From the IMG/VR virus record IMGVR_UViG_3300020471_000004, positions 168,693 to 232,692 of that record: DNA of 64,000 nucleotides. One strand, given 5' to 3'. Below are positions 48,193 to 53,638 of this stretch, piece after piece. The translations under genes were made by a program, and so were the position numbers. Each line of letters begins with the position of its first letter. Position 1 is the first letter of the stretch. The notes below the pieces were generated by a model. The model searched no databases. It saw nothing but the letters and a program-made list of their open reading frames with translations, and had not been told where the DNA came from.

Positions 48193-48782
48193 TGAGATTA
48201 TACAGAGCGATACCTAGTATGGTAGACGATAAAGTAATGTACCACAACAAGGAAGGACTCTTTTTCGGACATTACCGTAAACTTTGGTTTAAGATAGAAA
48301 CTTCGGATATTGAAATTGACGTACCTGTTAAACCTATCCCTAAGAACAACTGGCCTGTTATCAAAATAGATTCTAGTTGGGACCTAAGCTGTTTTAACGA
48401 AGATGATGTGATGGAAGCAAACATATACCGTTTTCGATGGGCAAATAGCAAAATGGTTCTTACTAAGCCTGATAACTTACAAGAAGTTTCCATTGTAGAC
48501 CTAGAAGGCAAAAATATAGAATCGGATGTTATTGCCTTAATGCGGTATTTCTTTTGCAAAGATAACCTAAGAAACGGATTGCTGTCTTTGTCAGGAACAA
48601 CAATAGCAAAAGGCGGTGTATCTCTTGCACTAAAGCATTATTTAAAAATATTGTCCCAAAGAAAAGAACTTGATGAACCGTATACGTTTGAACACATAGA
48701 ACTTACTTACGGTAAACTAGGTCTAGTTCTACACGTTTGGTTAAATGTACCTAATCCGCAACACTTCTCTATTACGCTATAA
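48192..48782 (+). CDS. hypothetical protein
   Basis: TGATG coupling, followed by terminator. Confidence 0.55.
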   Translation: MRLYRAIPSMVDDKVMYHNKEGLFFGHYRKLWFKIETSDIEIDVPVKPIPKNNWPVIKIDSSWDLSCFNEDDVMEANIYRFRWANSKMVLTKPDNLQEVSIVDLEGKNIESDVIALMRYFFCKDNLRNGLLSLSGTTIAKGGVSLALKHYLKILSQRKELDEPYTFEHIELTYGKLGLVLHVWLNVPNPQHFSITL

Positions 48783-48810
48783 AAAATCGGGGGCTTGTCT
48801 CCCGATTTTT
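48782..48810 (+). terminator. Rho-independent terminator (possibly bidirectional)
   Basis: AAAAATCGGGGG-CTTG-TCTCCCGATTTTT. Confidence 0.75.
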
Positions 48811-49765
48811 GTATCTCCTTCATAACTATAATTTAAAATCAGTAGGAGGGCACTTGGAAATAGAGCACTATCTTAAAGATGAACTAGGTTTCGAACCTCG
48901 ACCTAGCAACAAAAAAGAACCACCTACACTTCCTTTTCTACCTAACGGTCCCTATCAAGAATTTTTAAGAGGCAAGTGGTCAATCAAATTACTTGACCAC
49001 TTTCTTTTAGAAGAAAGAGTTAAAGTCGGAATAATACTACAGGTAACCATCCGAAAAGAGCCTGTAACACTGTTCAAAGGCTTTATAAACAAAAGCGATA
49101 GTGTTAACCAGCTAAAGCGATTGTTGTTAAGCTGTACTGACCTTCTCTCTGTTTCTGAAATAGATTATCCGTGCGAAAGAGTCAATATAAAATATACAGG
49201 ATCAAATTTTCACGAAAGAGGTTTCATACAGCAGTACTATCTGTGGGATTTCGAAGATTTGCTATCTAGTACGGTACCGCCGGGATTCAATGTATTGGTT
49301 CCAGAGGACATACCTGTAGATGAATGTATAGATTTTATAAACAACTATCTTTTGAATATAGGTAGCCCTAGTGTAGGAAAAGAAAATACTGGACGTATTA
49401 GGACTTTTAACAAAAGCTATATATCCCATTTTAACAGTGTCGGCGTAAACGTTTTGGATATTGATTCTCAAGGCAGAATGTTTATACAAGAAGGTCACGT
49501 AAAAGACACTCGGTACGGACTAAAGGACTCAAGGTCTGTTTATATCGTAAGACAAGCCCTTCTTTCGATAAAGGAAAACCGACAACAGGACACTATAAAC
49601 TTTTTTAAAGAAACAGGACTGGTACGAGACATGATCATAGGGCGTACTATTCACGATGATGTACGCATTTCTTTCTTAGGCACAAACGGTTTCGAAAGCA
49701 CAGAAGTAAATGGGCAGTTAGAAAATCTCGTCAGGTACTTTCGGAGAAAATTCGGAAATTTATGA
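48809..49765 (+). CDS. hypothetical protein
   Basis: long ORF; real start probably the TTG after AGGAGG near 48855. Confidence 0.5.
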   Translation: MYLLHNYNLKSVGGHLEIEHYLKDELGFEPRPSNKKEPPTLPFLPNGPYQEFLRGKWSIKLLDHFLLEERVKVGIILQVTIRKEPVTLFKGFINKSDSVNQLKRLLLSCTDLLSVSEIDYPCERVNIKYTGSNFHERGFIQQYYLWDFEDLLSSTVPPGFNVLVPEDIPVDECIDFINNYLLNIGSPSVGKENTGRIRTFNKSYISHFNSVGVNVLDIDSQGRMFIQEGHVKDTRYGLKDSRSVYIVRQALLSIKENRQQDTINFFKETGLVRDMIIGRTIHDDVRISFLGTNGFESTEVNGQLENLVRYFRRKFGNL

Positions 49766-49992
49766 AAACTACTATAGACAGTTGTATTTACCAACAGCTG
49801 GATATAAATACAATAGATGAAACAAAAAGTCTTCAAGAGCTAGGCGCAGATGAACTTGATTGCGTAGAAATAGCTATGCGGATAGAGATTGCGTTTGGTA
49901 TAGATATATTTGACGAGGACTTTGAGCAATTAAAAACTGTAAACGAACTGTATACCTACGTACAGGACTTAATTGAACGTAAGGAAAAATAA
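49762..49992 (+). CDS. acyl carrier protein homolog lacking the phosphopantetheine Ser
   Basis: SLQELGADELDCVEIAMRIEIAFGIDIFDEDFEQLKTV versus AcpP LGADSLDTVELVMALEEEF. Confidence 0.85.
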   Translation: MKTTIDSCIYQQLDINTIDETKSLQELGADELDCVEIAMRIEIAFGIDIFDEDFEQLKTVNELYTYVQDLIERKEK

Positions 49993-50126
49993 TGAAAAGT
50001 CCCAAAGTAATTATAGCTATCTTTATATTGATTCTTGTATTACTTTGGGAATTTTTAACAATAAAAATTCGAATGTTTAAGGAACGTAAAAATGAAAACC
50101 GTAACAGGACTAAACAGACTAATTGA
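49992..50126 (+). CDS. small single-TM protein (not in ORF track)
   Basis: AAGGA SD, MKSPKVIIAIFILILVLLWEFLTIK..., 44 aa. Confidence 0.4.
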   Translation: MKSPKVIIAIFILILVLLWEFLTIKIRMFKERKNENRNRTKQTN

Positions 50127-50916
50127 GTACAGAGAACTTGCCGTAAGTCAGATGGTACAAGCGTTTGCGATGGCTGCTCTGAGTCCTGCTAGACGCCGAA
50201 AGACAGGCGCGGTTATTATAAAACAGATTGAAGGCAAGGAATGGGTACCTCTTAGTCAAGGTTACAACGGAACTCGAACAGGTGACTCTAACCTGTGTGA
50301 AGATATTTACGGTAAGACTTTACCTAATGTAATTCATGCAGAGAAAAACACTTTTATCAAAATGATTACACAAGGCATTGCTACACAAGGCAGTACCTTA
50401 GTAGTTACCTTTATTCCTTGTGCAAACTGCGTACAAGACATAATAGATGCTCGCGTAGCAGAGGTAATATATTGCCAAACAAGCGAAAGAAAGGCAGGAG
50501 GTCTAAAAGAGCTATCTAAAGCTGGAGTTCTTGTAAGTAGAATATCTGAAAAAGAAGTTAGTGAGTTTACTGCAAGCATAAACAAAGGTCTAGAACAAGA
50601 CAAGTTTATGGCAGAAGTCACTGATTCTAATCCTATAAAAGATTGGTTAGACCGTAACCCTGGTATAGAACCTATGGACGTAGTACGCAGGTTCATGGAC
50701 AACATTGCTCCTAGGGAAAGTTTCCAAACGCTCCAGGTCTTTTCTATATTGCCTATCTTAGGTGCACACAAAGACCCTGATGGTACTTTGAGCCTAAAAG
50801 GTTTCGAGGACTGGGTGAACCTGACGTTTATTGAGTATAACAAGTACCTACACTATTCAAAGCATTCTAGCATAAGCCCTGAAAACTTTATAAAGCTTTT
50901 TGAGGAAAAGAAATGA
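50092..50916 (+). CDS. dCMP deaminase with C-terminal extension
   Basis: GAVI, GYNG, HAE, PCANC zinc motifs. Confidence 0.88.
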   Translation: MKTVTGLNRLIEYRELAVSQMVQAFAMAALSPARRRKTGAVIIKQIEGKEWVPLSQGYNGTRTGDSNLCEDIYGKTLPNVIHAEKNTFIKMITQGIATQGSTLVVTFIPCANCVQDIIDARVAEVIYCQTSERKAGGLKELSKAGVLVSRISEKEVSEFTASINKGLEQDKFMAEVTDSNPIKDWLDRNPGIEPMDVVRRFMDNIAPRESFQTLQVFSILPILGAHKDPDGTLSLKGFEDWVNLTFIEYNKYLHYSKHSSISPENFIKLFEEKK

Positions 50917-51245
50917 CAACTATAAATCTCAAAACCAAGTTTAACCCTGATCTGATAGTGCAAGAGCTAGAGCAGGACACACCTGACTTAGTGCAGCAGA
51001 AAGTTTATGATATTATCAATCTCAAAGAGCAAGGTGTAAGAGACGCATTGCGCAAGCTAGGTTATAGAGAGCCTGATTCTCAAGACAACACAGTAAACCC
51101 TGTAGTTATTGACCATGCCTTGTCTACAATATTGACCGAAAGTCTAAGTCGAGTAGGAGTATCTGCAAACAAAATGCAAATAGACTATGCCTTAAATGCT
51201 CTAGTAGGTTACTTGGCTTCTACACATTGCGTGGTAATAAAATGA
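50913..51245 (+). CDS. hypothetical protein
   Basis: ATGA overlaps on both sides. Confidence 0.55.
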   Translation: MTTINLKTKFNPDLIVQELEQDTPDLVQQKVYDIINLKEQGVRDALRKLGYREPDSQDNTVNPVVIDHALSTILTESLSRVGVSANKMQIDYALNALVGYLASTHCVVIK

Positions 51246-51499
51246 ATAGCATTGAACAAGTGGAAGCCTGTGCCCGAAAGCTACTTTCACAAATGTATAA
51301 TTGCCGAGAGTCTAGTTTAACAGACGGTACAGCTATCGAATCAGAATTCGGAATGGACAGCCTGAGCTTTTTTGAGCTGTTGGTGCAGATGGAAGACTGC
51401 CTTGATATAGAGATAGACGAAAACCGTCTACCCTCTGATTTTATCAGTAAGACTTTTAGAGAACAGATTAATGGAATTGCAAGCAGCATCAGAGTATGA
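51242..51499 (+). CDS. acyl/peptidyl carrier protein with intact Ser
   Basis: FGMDSLSFFELLVQMEDCLDIEI; start taken at the ATGA overlap (51242). Confidence 0.75.
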   Translation: MNSIEQVEACARKLLSQMYNCRESSLTDGTAIESEFGMDSLSFFELLVQMEDCLDIEIDENRLPSDFISKTFREQINGIASSIRV

Positions 51500-51755
51500 C
51501 ACTCGTATCTCTGTATTTTTAGCCCTAAGGACCTTTAGACAGTACCAAGGTATCGAAAAAGGCGAGTACTTTATCACTATAGGTAACCACACCCGTAGAG
51601 TAGAACACGTTTATGACCTAGACCGCTCTAAGTTTTTATTAGACACTACTATGGATGTTGATGTTACTCGCGTACAAAAAGTGTATGTCAAAAGCGTTGT
51701 GGTAACAGTCAAAGATACTCCACTAGGGCCTCTAACTACTGCCAAATCAAAATAA
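51471..51755 (+). CDS. hypothetical protein
   Basis: 94-aa ORF. Confidence 0.45.
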   Translation: MELQAASEYDTRISVFLALRTFRQYQGIEKGEYFITIGNHTRRVEHVYDLDRSKFLLDTTMDVDVTRVQKVYVKSVVVTVKDTPLGPLTTAKSK

Positions 51756-51799: not shown

Positions 51800-52207
51800 A
51801 TGCCTCCTCTTAAACCGTATTTGGTAAACGCTACCTGGAGAAACATCACAGACTGCGGTCACACTCCTCATATCCATATACACATTGATGAAAGGTGCAT
51901 CGTGCCTACTGAATTCGCTAAACAAGTTGAGCATCCAGACGGCGCCTTTCTAGGAATTACACTAAGTATTTCTCTTACAGCCGCTCCTGATTTGATAATG
52001 AATGACCAAGAAACTGATTTACATTTTAGTAGCAGATTCGGCGGCAAGCATGTAAGATGCTTGGTTCCTTACGACTGTATAGTTGCTATTTACGCAAAAG
52101 AAGACCTAGAACTAGGGCTTGCTTTTGAGTACCAACCGCCGAAAGAACCTGTAGAACAAGAGGCTCCTGTTAGAACCGAAAAACCTGTACTTCAAGTAGT
52201 CAAGTAG
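51800..52207 (+). CDS. sspB: ClpXP adaptor SspB
   Basis: KPYL..A....I.D...TPH, FSSRFGG, VP...IVAIYAKE, C-terminal ClpX-binding tail PVLQVVK. Confidence 0.88.
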   Translation: MPPLKPYLVNATWRNITDCGHTPHIHIHIDERCIVPTEFAKQVEHPDGAFLGITLSISLTAAPDLIMNDQETDLHFSSRFGGKHVRCLVPYDCIVAIYAKEDLELGLAFEYQPPKEPVEQEAPVRTEKPVLQVVK

Positions 52208-52228: not shown

Positions 52229-53638
52229 ATGCAATATAAAGTGCCGCGCGTAGTATGTGATGACTTTACAAATGTAGAGTTAAAAAATTCAGACAGAGCT
52301 TACTCAGGCTTTGTTATAAGTTTCTTCAATGTAGGTGAGGACCTGCCGTTTAGTAAAAATCAGACCTTAGCTGGCTTGCGTGTAGAAATGCGAAACGGTG
52401 AAATCTATAGCAACACAAGCCAACCTGTTCGGGTAATGTCTGTAGAAAAAAGCTCTAACACCAATTCTTATCTAGCCGAGTTTGCGTATATTGCCGAACC
52501 GTCTACGAACAGTGCTGATACCCAATATCTGTATTGGGCTAACAAGATACTTGAAGAAGGTGCGCATTCAGGTAACCGTACTGATACAGATACAATCAAG
52601 CTGTTTGGTGATGCACAAATGAAATTTGACCTTCGCGAAGGTCTCCCTGTTCTTACAACAAAGCAAGTTAACATAAGTGCTTTAAAGAAAGAGCTTTGCT
52701 GGTTCATGCGTGGTGAAACCAACATAAAGACTTTAGGTAGCGCAATATGGAACGCATGGTCAACTGAATCTGGTGAACTAGGTCCAGTATACGGCGAACA
52801 GTGGAGAGGCTGGTTATCGTGGCACGAAGTTCACGAGTCTCAATCTGAAAAAATAAAATTCTTAGAAGAACGAGGGTATACCAAAGGTTATCAAGTCGGT
52901 TGTTTTCTTCTATACCACAAGCGTATCGACCAAATTGCAAATCTAGTAAACGAACTAAAGACAAACCCTAATACCCGCCGTATGATCGTTACTGCCTGGA
53001 ATCCTGGTGTAGACCCAGATACCAAGCTTTCGCCTAACAAAAATGCTGAACTAGGTATGCAAGCTCTTCCTCCTTGTCACACTATTTGGCAAGTGGGCTG
53101 TACTCAGATTCCTACCCAAACAGAACGCGAAGCAGAGTGGTTACGATTACAAGCTATAAAGACCATGCATGAAATGGACGTAAGCTTTGACGAAGGCTAT
53201 GTGTTAAGTCATAACCTCTGGGCACTTCATGTTTCTGATACTGCGAAAGCAATGGACGAAACCTCAGAAGAAGTAGTCTTAAAATCTGCTCTAGACCAAG
53301 TAAATGCTCCTGAGTATTACTTAGACCTTAAGCTTTACCAACGTAGTGCTGATTGGTTCCTTGGTGTGCCCTTTAATATAGCCAGCTACGCTATGCTTGC
53401 AGAAATACTGGCAGCACACACAGGACATGTTGCGCGTAACTTCTACCACACGTTCGGCGATTTCCACATTTACGAAAACCATGTAGCGCAGATCAAGATG
53501 CAGATGCAACAAGAACACAGAGCACTGCCCCGCTGTTACATTAAACCTAAGCAAGATATAGCTTACTACACCCATGAAGATATTCATGTATTAGGTTATC
53601 AAGGCGGTATCAAGCTTACAGGTGCAGTAGCAGTATAG
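52229..53638 (+). CDS. thyA: thymidylate synthase
   Basis: LTTK, ELCWF, LGPVYG.QWR, RRMIVTAWNP, LPPCH, YQRSADWFLGVPFNIASY, GDFHIY. Confidence 0.95.
   Translation: MQYKVPRVVCDDFTNVELKNSDRAYSGFVISFFNVGEDLPFSKNQTLAGLRVEMRNGEIYSNTSQPVRVMSVEKSSNTNSYLAEFAYIAEPSTNSADTQYLYWANKILEEGAHSGNRTDTDTIKLFGDAQMKFDLREGLPVLTTKQVNISALKKELCWFMRGETNIKTLGSAIWNAWSTESGELGPVYGEQWRGWLSWHEVHESQSEKIKFLEERGYTKGYQVGCFLLYHKRIDQIANLVNELKTNPNTRRMIVTAWNPGVDPDTKLSPNKNAELGMQALPPCHTIWQVGCTQIPTQTEREAEWLRLQAIKTMHEMDVSFDEGYVLSHNLWALHVSDTAKAMDETSEEVVLKSALDQVNAPEYYLDLKLYQRSADWFLGVPFNIASYAMLAEILAAHTGHVARNFYHTFGDFHIYENHVAQIKMQMQQEHRALPRCYIKPKQDIAYYTHEDIHVLGYQGGIKLTGAVAV

What the first reader, a model, noticed from the sequence alone, without database searches (positions are those of the whole stretch)
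49762..49992. AcpP look-alike with Ser-to-Glu at the phosphopantetheine site (decoy ACP)
Seen: codons ggc gca gat GAA ctt gat give GADELD where AcpP has GADSLD. Ser to Glu needs at least two base changes, so a single-base error is unlikely, and the rest of helix II and the KTV motif are conserved. Established: that Ser is required for phosphopantetheinylation, and host AcpP binds AcpS, Fab and Lpx enzymes, SpoT and MukB. Inference: a non-loadable mimic that could block lipid or lipid A synthesis, SpoT signalling, or an ACP-dependent host or defence complex.
Basis: partly seen in the sequence, partly recalled or inferred. Interest (0 to 1): 0.72.

Follow-up and report, generated by a model that had tools for sequence, protein, structure and literature searches.

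The report
Serine-less acyl carrier protein in phage
A marine jumbo phage carries a well-conserved copy of the bacterial acyl carrier protein that has lost the serine needed to carry fatty acids, and similar serine-less copies occur in several unrelated phage groups, so it probably works by binding proteins rather than by carrying acyl chains.

Summary
ORF 49762..49992 (+, 76 aa) is an acyl carrier protein (ACP) family protein (Pfam PF00550, E 2.5e-9). The AF2 model (pLDDT 92.6) is a four-helix ACP bundle, and Glu31 (GAA, 49852-49854) sits where the phosphopantetheine serine belongs, at the start of helix II.

It is not a one-off or an error:
- Independent marine and coral-reef assemblies show no variant at this codon.
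- dN/dS against a 95%-identical relative is 0.13.
- All 17 orthologue clusters in related ~240-260 kb marine phages lack serine (Glu, Asp or Asn).
- The gene always overlaps an upstream ~300-aa gene of unknown function by 4 nt.

Serine-less ACPs (Glu, Asp, Ala, Pro) also occur in at least two other phage families and several single contigs. They make up about 6% of a sample of phage ACP motifs. A few bacterial proteins have them too.

The phage record encodes no phosphopantetheinyl transferase, ketosynthase, adenylating enzyme or PlsB/C-type acyltransferase.

The protein is therefore functional and cannot be loaded in the canonical way. Its mechanism is inferred. The likeliest is mimicry of host ACP on ACP-binding proteins. 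The close rival is a role as subunit of the co-translated 303-aa phage protein. The SpoT idea is disfavoured, because SpoT is reported not to bind apo-ACP.

The parts
48789..48810 (+). Terminator-like hairpin plus T-run. It closes the preceding gene (stop at 48782) and lies just before the 303-aa/ACP-1 unit.
   Evidence: This is a consensus match only; the number of such sites in the region is not above chance.
48854..49765 (+). 303-aa gene of unknown function. It starts at TTG 48854, preceded by aggagg at 48844-48849. Its stop overlaps the ACP-1 start by 4 nt (ATGA).
   Evidence: Only 3 homologue clusters were found among 5.8e9 proteins, all in the same phage clade. There is no hit in Pfam, PHROG, PADLOC or PDB. 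dN/dS is 0.11. The same overlap is present in NCTB and the TARA relatives.
49762..49992 (+). ACP-1: a serine-less ACP-fold protein of 76 aa, pI 4.05.
   Evidence: PF00550 E 2.5e-9. PHROG 5934 E 1.7e-16. AF2 pLDDT 92.6 with helices at 2-13, 31-45, 51-55 and 60-75. Foldseek TM about 0.8 to E. coli AcpP. dN/dS 0.13.
49852..49854 (+). GAA codon for Glu31, at the position of the phosphopantetheine-attachment Ser (Ser36 in E. coli AcpP), first residue of helix II.
   Evidence: The codon is unchanged in independent assemblies.
49992..50126 (+). 44-aa ORF with one hydrophobic, probably membrane-spanning stretch and a basic tail (pI 11.1). Its ATG shares one base with the ACP-1 stop codon. Whether it belongs to the unit is uncertain.
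   Evidence: A small hydrophobic ORF lies at a similar place in NCTB (L001:4621..4746). It was not called as a gene in the relatives' contigs.
51242..51499 (+). ACP-2: a second ACP-like gene of 85 aa that keeps the serine (GMDSLS). Its start overlaps the end of ORF 50913..51245, and its end overlaps the start of ORF 51471..51755.
   Evidence: PF00550 E 1.5e-5. dN/dS 0.05. Present in NCTB (L001:5576..5824) but absent from the TARA relatives.

Best explanation
ACP-1 is a functional phage protein with the ACP fold and without the attachment serine, so it cannot receive a phosphopantetheine arm by the canonical route. It therefore acts by protein-protein binding, not by carrying acyl groups. The mechanism I commit to is mimicry of host ACP. 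It presents the canonical acidic helix II docking face (A-D-x-L-D-x-V/I-E...M..E..F) to one or more host proteins that bind ACP, and occupies those sites as a permanently unloaded ACP. The acidic side chain (Glu/Asp) replaces the serine that carries the phosphate-linked arm in holo-ACP. The likeliest clients are those known to respond to ACP without its prosthetic group: glycerol-3-phosphate acyltransferase, which apo-ACP inhibits, MukB-type SMC ATPases, which apo- and holo-ACP stimulate equally, or the holo-ACP synthase itself. The co-translated 303-aa protein probably acts with it.

Shown: the fold, the loss of serine, purifying selection, conservation of the loss across orthologues and in other phage families, and the absence of four ACP-linked enzyme families from the phage record.

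Inferred: that it binds host ACP clients, and which ones.
For: - Fold and motif.
- Serine is absent in every orthologue: 12 Glu, 2 Asp and 3 Asn clusters, plus a truncated fourth Asn entry.
- Purifying selection: dN/dS 0.13, similar to neighbouring genes.
- Orthologues were found by synteny, not by motif, yet they keep D35, L37, D38, V/I40, E41, M44, E47 and F50 (E. coli numbering), the face that ACP client enzymes recognise.
- Serine-less ACPs from unrelated phages share no neighbouring gene but keep the same canonical face: E47 82%, I54 82%, acidic D56 71% at positions that were not part of the search pattern. This argues for a shared host-side partner rather than a private phage partner.
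- The 93%-complete phage record has no PPTase, adenylating enzyme, ketosynthase or PlsB/C-type acyltransferase.
- Precedents from papers: apo-ACP inhibits glycerol-3-phosphate acyltransferase more strongly than holo-ACP, and its production has been reported to stop growth (PMC3896788). MukB ATPase is stimulated equally by apo- and holo-AcpP (PMC8602292).
Against: - No binding to any host protein was tested, and the host is unknown.
- The D-x-L-D helix cap also has a structural role, so its retention need not reflect host clients.
- For the non-orthologous set, the motif positions are invariant by construction of the scan.
- Identity to bacterial AcpPs is only 30-38%, which is not what recent capture of a host gene for mimicry would give.
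- The strict translational coupling to the 303-aa phage gene in all four sub-lineages points at least as strongly to a phage partner.
- Most Fab enzymes bind unloaded ACP weakly (my own knowledge, not tested here).
Confidence: 0.4

Rival explanations
1. ACP-1 is a structural or adaptor subunit of the phage's own 303-aa protein. The two are made in fixed proportion from overlapping genes and form a complex. The ACP fold serves only as a binding module, as ACP does for MukB or for LYR-motif proteins in mitochondria, and no host ACP client is targeted.
For: The 4-nt ATGA overlap and strict co-occurrence of the ~300-aa gene and the serine-less ACP hold in all four sub-lineages, although the proteins have diverged to 36-50% identity. 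Both genes have similar dN/dS, 0.11 and 0.13. The 303-aa family occurs only where ACP-1 orthologues occur. A terminator-like hairpin lies just upstream, so the pair opens a unit. One 169-nt metatranscriptome contig lies inside the 303-aa gene.
Against: The complex prediction gave ipSAE 0.00, which the tool rates as 'no answer', so it counts neither way. Serine-less ACPs in other phages have no homologue of the 303-aa protein nearby. A private partner would not explain why the canonical ACP docking face is kept.
Confidence: 0.3
2. ACP-1 regulates or partners the phage's serine-bearing ACP-2. For example, it could compete for the same loading or acyl-transfer enzymes, so that the pair forms one phage-run carrier pathway.
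For: A serine-less and a serine-bearing ACP lie close together in the window (1.2 kb apart), in NCTB, and as immediate neighbours in the unrelated contig L015. Duplicated ACPs were also noted in Flavobacterium jumbophages (PMC13573597).
Against: The TARA sub-clade keeps the 301-aa gene and the serine-less ACP but has no ACP-2. Most other serine-less ACP loci show no second ACP within the DNA held.
Confidence: 0.08
3. ACP-1 is still a carrier, but uses the Glu/Asp carboxylate for a non-canonical covalent attachment, in the way amino-group carrier proteins such as LysW use a glutamate (LysW is cited from my own knowledge).
For: Within the orthologue family the site is almost always acidic: 12 Glu and 2 Asp clusters against 3 Asn. 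The 303-aa neighbour could be an unknown ligase.
Against: The site is Asn in the NCTB sub-lineage and Ala or Pro in another serine-less family, so the side chain is not strictly required. No ATP-grasp or adenylating domain was detected.
Confidence: 0.04
4. ACP-1 is a decaying duplicate of ACP-2 or of a host gene, with no function of its own, or it is an assembly artefact.
For: Loss of the key catalytic-site residue is the classic mark of a pseudogene.
Against: dN/dS is 0.13. The frame is intact and the loss is conserved in 17 orthologue clusters from many samples. The codon is identical in independent runs. The ACP fold is predicted with confidence.
Confidence: 0.02

Closest known systems
Bacterial type II fatty-acid-synthesis acyl carrier protein (AcpP; e.g. 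PDB 1acp, 1l0i, 2ehs)
   Same: Same four-helix fold (TM about 0.8, rmsd 1.2-1.6 A). The G-A-D-x-L-D-x-V-E helix II motif aligns column for column. It has the same small size and acidity (pI 4.05).
   Different: Glu replaces the attachment Ser. Identity is only 30-38%. The gene is phage-encoded, lies outside any fab cluster and sits next to nucleotide-metabolism genes. Helix II is less acidic, with Arg, Ile and Ala at the positions of A45, E48 and E49.
Phage acyl carrier proteins (PHROG 5934), e.g. Vibrio phage ICP1 Gp97, Erythrobacter phage R6L gp32, Brevundimonas phage Bajun
   Same: Best family match (E 1.7e-16). ICP1 Gp97 is 42% identical. These are small stand-alone phage genes of unknown role.
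   Different: Those isolates keep the serine. The window's clade never has it.
Apo-ACP (unmodified AcpP) as an inhibitor in E. coli
   Same: A serine-less ACP is by construction a permanent apo-like ACP. Apo-ACP is reported to inhibit glycerol-3-phosphate acyltransferase more strongly than holo-ACP, and its production to stop growth (PMC3896788).
   Different: That is a host protein in an abnormal state, not a dedicated gene. No such activity was tested for ACP-1.
AcpP as a prosthetic-group-independent cofactor of MukB
   Same: It shows that the ACP fold can act purely as a binding subunit: apo- and holo-AcpP stimulate the MukB ATPase equally (PMC8602292).
   Different: The host of this phage is unknown, and so is whether it has MukBEF. 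No link to SMC proteins was found in the locus.

Membership tests
ACP / PP-binding superfamily (Pfam PF00550) | Profile match above the curated cut-off | tested here: met
   37.7 bits against a cut-off of 20.8, E 2.5e-9. 104 PDB ACP sequences match at E<=0.01.
ACP / PP-binding superfamily (Pfam PF00550) | Four-helix bundle, with helix II starting at the attachment site | tested here: met
   AF2 pLDDT 92.6, helices at 2-13, 31-45, 51-55 and 60-75. Foldseek TM 0.73-0.82 to solved ACPs. Atlas TM 0.88.
Functional (loadable) carrier proteins | Conserved Ser of the D-S-L motif that receives 4'-phosphopantetheine | tested here: not met
   Glu31 (GAA 49852-49854) aligns with the Ser of GADSLD. Orthologues have E, D or N, never S.
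Functional (loadable) carrier proteins | Phosphopantetheinylation by a PPTase, and a cognate PPTase or acyl-transfer enzymes | not testable with these tools
   Modification needs mass spectrometry. The phage record has no PF01648, PF00501, PF00109 or PF01553 match.
Host AcpP orthologue (type II FAS) | High identity to bacterial AcpP and a location in a fab gene cluster | tested here: not met
   Identity is 30-38%. The neighbours are a gene of unknown function, dCMP deaminase, an SspB-like gene and ThyA.
Phage ACP family PHROG 5934 | Profile match | tested here: met
   E 1.7e-16, 61.2 bits.
Protein mimic / decoy of a host hub protein | Physical binding to the host partners of the mimicked protein, and interference with them | not testable with these tools
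   The host is unknown.
Known anti-phage defence or counter-defence families (PADLOC) | Profile match | tested here: not met
   No PADLOC hit for ACP-1, the 303-aa protein, ACP-2 or three neighbouring ORFs (50913..51245, 51471..51755 and the 44-aa ORF).

The most novel reading that the evidence does not exclude
Serine-less ACPs are a recurrent, so far undescribed class of phage host-takeover proteins. They would be permanently unloaded mimics of the bacterial ACP hub that jam ACP-dependent host machinery, such as membrane-lipid synthesis through the acyltransferase step, MukBEF-type chromosome organisation, or ACP activation. They would have arisen or spread in several phage lineages. In this clade the mimic would be delivered together with a dedicated 303-aa partner.
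Probability: 0.3. Interest if true: 0.8.

Novelty: new variant of a known kind. Interest (0 to 1): 0.6.

Why it matters
ACP is among the most abundant and best-connected proteins in bacteria. Phage ACP genes are usually annotated as auxiliary metabolic genes and assumed to carry acyl groups. Here a whole orthologue family, and at least two further phage families, have dropped the attachment serine while staying under selection. For these genes the standard annotation 'acyl carrier protein' is therefore functionally wrong, and a binding-only role is implied. If they act as mimics of host ACP, they would be a new way for phages to interfere with membrane synthesis or other ACP-dependent processes. 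They would also be natural probes for which ACP interactions are independent of the prosthetic group. The claim can be tested with simple experiments: mass spectrometry, toxicity assays and pull-downs.

Tried and rejected
- Megablast of the locus against GenBank phages found no match. The nearest record comes only from protein search (Phage NCTB).
- The 303-aa neighbour gave nothing informative. There is no hit in Pfam, PHROG, PADLOC or the PDB profile search. The AF2 model was too poor for a fold search (pLDDT 57). ESM Atlas scores were 0.54 or less and TM 0.35 or less, so the BioW and GNAT rows are at chance level.
- The complex prediction of the 303-aa protein with ACP-1 gave ipSAE 0.00, 'no answer'. 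It is not used as evidence.
- All-against-all BLASTP of neighbours of serine-less ACPs found no shared neighbour outside close relatives. Pfam on ten such neighbours identified only a GH108 endolysin next to the L019 copy.
- The contexts of the bacterial serine-less ACP proteins from Pedobacter and Chthoniobacterales were uninformative.
- The tree of 113 ACP domains is too poorly resolved to count independent serine losses; the number lies between 1 and 8.
- tblastn of the L009 ACP against phages found no match.
- Literature searches found no description of serine-less phage ACPs.
- Rejected readings: sequencing error, pseudogene, and SpoT as the target.

Full report
**1. The observation**

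The window holds an ORF at 49762..49992 on the + strand. It encodes 76 residues, and residues 27-36 read LGADELDCVE. The codon for Glu31 is GAA at 49852-49854. The protein matches Pfam PP-binding (PF00550) at 37.7 bits against a cut-off of 20.8, and the phage family PHROG 5934 'acyl carrier protein' at E 1.7e-16.

Against solved structures the best matches are type II fatty-acid-synthesis ACPs: Aquifex 2ehs at E 5.6e-10 and E. coli AcpP at 4.5e-6. The printed alignments put their GADSLD exactly on GADELD.

An AlphaFold2 model built on an alignment of 18 relatives has mean pLDDT 92.6 and four helices (2-13, 31-45, 51-55, 60-75). Glu31 is therefore the first residue of helix II, as Ser36 is in AcpP. 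Foldseek gives TM about 0.8 and rmsd 1.2-1.6 A to E. coli AcpP at 30-33% identity.

A change from any Ser codon to GAA needs at least two substitutions.

**2. Not an error and not a one-off**

- The identical protein was seen on 29 contigs. Five near-identical cluster representatives (91-99%) all keep GADELD.
- The stretch is held by many marine and coral-reef metagenome runs from more than ten studies. Contigs from three of them show no variant at 49852-49854. The only ACP-1 variant is 49811 C>T.
- Against a relative from another sample (L150), ACP-1 has 11 synonymous and 7 non-synonymous differences, giving dN/dS 0.13. This is in line with its neighbours: 0.11 for the upstream gene, 0.135 for dCMP deaminase and 0.05 for the second ACP.

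**3. The genome and the orthologues**

The window is the last 64 kb of a 232,692-bp IMG/VR virus record rated 93% complete. The nearest named relative is Phage NCTB (LT598654, 258 kb). A paper calls it Trichodesmium phage NCTB and places it in the 'Lupandier' group of jumbo phages.

In NCTB the syntenic ORF is not annotated. It reads ...KADNLDFVEL, with Asn at the site. In TARA Oceans contigs and one NCBI assembly of 241 kb the syntenic gene reads LKADDLD or LGADDLD, with Asp.

A profile of these orthologues was searched against 5.8 billion proteins. It returned 17 full-length orthologue clusters and none has Ser: 12 Glu, 2 Asp and 3 Asn (plus a truncated fourth Asn entry). Two more distant relatives also have Asp. 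The first serine-bearing hits appear only at E 1e-4 to 1e-5.

The serine was therefore lost before this phage clade diversified. Its other proteins are now only 36-50% identical. The site has since moved among Glu, Asp and Asn.

**4. Local anatomy**

- Upstream lies a gene whose true start is TTG 48854, after aggagg at 48844-48849. It encodes 303 residues and ends at 49765, so its stop overlaps the ACP-1 start in ATGA.
- The same 4-nt overlap occurs in NCTB, the TARA relatives and L150.
- A terminator-like hairpin with a T-run (48789-48810) lies between the preceding gene and this pair.
- The 303-aa family has only three homologue clusters, all in this clade. It matches nothing in Pfam, PHROG, PADLOC or the PDB, and its AF2 model is poor.
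- Directly after ACP-1 comes a 44-aa hydrophobic ORF, then dCMP deaminase.
- At 51242..51499 there is a second ACP-like gene that keeps its serine (GMDSLS). NCTB has it too, but the TARA sub-clade lacks it.
- The phage record has no match to the PPTase family PF01648, the adenylating family PF00501, the ketosynthase family PF00109 or the PlsB/C acyltransferase family PF01553.

**5. A wider class**

A degenerate DNA scan of 2.9 million viral contigs for G-A-D-E-[L/F]-D-x-V-E found 23 stretches. Ten of them are small ACP-like ORFs or domains in unrelated contigs of 40 to 265 kb, one of them high in G+C.

It gave 97 Ser. The ACP-like non-Ser matches were 2 Glu, 1 Asp, 2 Ala and 1 Pro, about 6% of ACP-like matches.

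A tree of 113 such domains is poorly resolved. It recovers three serine-less groups: the window's clade (E/D/D/N, SH-aLRT 91), a family from ~40-kb contigs (E/E/D/A/P, 98) and a group from large contigs (all E, 86). Five single rows stand apart. The label needs 8 changes on this tree, but the well-supported branches force only one, so the number of independent losses is open.

- In the ~40-kb family the gene lies between a GH108 endolysin and spanin-like genes.
- In L015 a Glu copy is followed immediately by a Ser copy.
- A profile search of 1.84 billion representatives found further Glu, Asp, Pro, Gln and Tyr variants. Some are bacterial proteins, from Pedobacter nanyangensis (353 aa) and a Chthoniobacterales MAG (264 aa), in uninformative contexts.
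- Cultured-phage ACPs that I checked keep Ser: ICP1 Gp97, Erythrobacter R6L gp32, Brevundimonas Bajun and Vibrio 10AMN.

**6. What it most likely does**

Shown:
- ACP-1 has the ACP fold.
- It lacks the only residue to which phosphopantetheine is attached.
- It is under purifying selection.

That PPTases need this serine is established knowledge of the family. A preprint shows that even a neighbouring D35N change blocks AcpS. The protein must therefore work by binding.

Two readings compete.

*Mimicry of host ACP.* The orthologues were found by synteny rather than by motif. They still keep the canonical docking residues D35, L37, D38, V/I40, E41, M44, E47 and F50. Serine-less ACPs in unrelated phages share no neighbouring gene yet keep the same face. 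This holds even at positions outside the scan pattern: E47 82%, I54 82%, acidic D56 71%. A common host-side partner would explain this. Apo-ACP is reported to inhibit glycerol-3-phosphate acyltransferase more strongly than holo-ACP, and its production to stop growth. MukB is activated equally by apo- and holo-AcpP. So unloaded ACP is known to be biologically active.

*Subunit of the phage's 303-aa protein.* The conserved translational coupling and strict co-occurrence speak for this. The complex prediction returned 'no answer' and decides nothing.

I rate mimicry at 0.40 and the subunit role at 0.30. The two can combine, with the 303-aa protein being brought to ACP-binding sites. Lesser rivals:
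- A role tied to ACP-2 is contradicted by the TARA clade, which lacks ACP-2.
- A non-canonical carrier that uses the carboxylate is contradicted by the Asn, Ala and Pro variants.
- A pseudogene is contradicted by selection.

The predominance of Glu and Asp may mimic the phosphate of the holo form, but that is speculation.

**7. Comparison and novelty**

The protein is a member of the ACP superfamily by fold and profile. It fails the defining feature of a functional carrier, the attachment serine. It is not an orthologue of host AcpP.

Phage ACP genes are known and routinely annotated. I found no paper describing serine-less phage ACPs or their function. One preprint predicts a phage ACP-FabZ contact, and one paper notes duplicated ACPs in jumbophages.

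I therefore class it as a new variant of a known kind, with moderate to high interest. The finding is solid at the sequence level and recurs across phages, but the mechanism is still inferred.

Noticed in passing
window 51242..51499 (+): A second ACP-like gene (85 aa, PF00550 E 1.5e-5) keeps the serine (GMDSLS). Its start overlaps the end of ORF 50913..51245, and its end overlaps the start of ORF 51471..51755. Neither neighbouring ORF matches any family. dN/dS is 0.05. The phage record has no PPTase, so the host would have to load it.
   Followed up: partly
L001:3974..4228 (LT598654.1, about 118343-118597): The serine-less ACP orthologue of Phage NCTB (Asn at the site) is not annotated in the GenBank record. 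The annotation shows a gap between BN7874_150 and BN7874_151.
   Followed up: yes
window 51800..52207 (+): A phage-encoded SspB-like protein (PF04386, E 3.3e-9), possibly a ClpXP adaptor. It is conserved in NCTB and the TARA relatives.
   Followed up: no
window 52229..53638 (+) and 50092..50916 (+): The thymidylate synthase is 469 aa. Matches to other phage ThyA begin only around residue 78-99, so it has an N-terminal extension of unknown function. The dCMP deaminase (274 aa) has a C-terminal half with no family match.
   Followed up: no
window 49992..50126 (+): A 44-aa ORF with one hydrophobic stretch and a basic tail. Its ATG shares a base with the ACP-1 stop codon. A comparable small hydrophobic ORF lies before the dCMP deaminase in NCTB. 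It was not called as a gene in the relatives' contigs.
   Followed up: partly
L150:6998..7639 and L149:5133..5822: Close relatives differ by inserted genes in this otherwise collinear block. L150 has a 213-aa gene (faint EcoP15I-like hit) between the 94-aa ORF and the SspB-like gene. L149 has a 229-aa gene directly after its serine-less ACP.
   Followed up: no
L019:4085..4309 (-), L029:44..271 (+), L045, L120, L144: In a family of ~40-kb marine phage contigs the serine-less ACP (site E, D, A or P) lies inside what looks like the lysis cassette, between GH108 endolysin genes and spanin-like genes.
   Followed up: partly
L015:4091..4348 (-) and L015:3775..4083 (-): An unrelated 44-kb viral contig carries a Glu-site ACP immediately followed by a Ser-site ACP. 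This is the same pairing as in the window and in NCTB.
   Followed up: partly
window 49266..49434: One marine metatranscriptome run holds a 169-nt contig identical to part of the 303-aa gene. This is weak evidence that the unit is transcribed in nature, and DNA carry-over is not excluded.
   Followed up: partly
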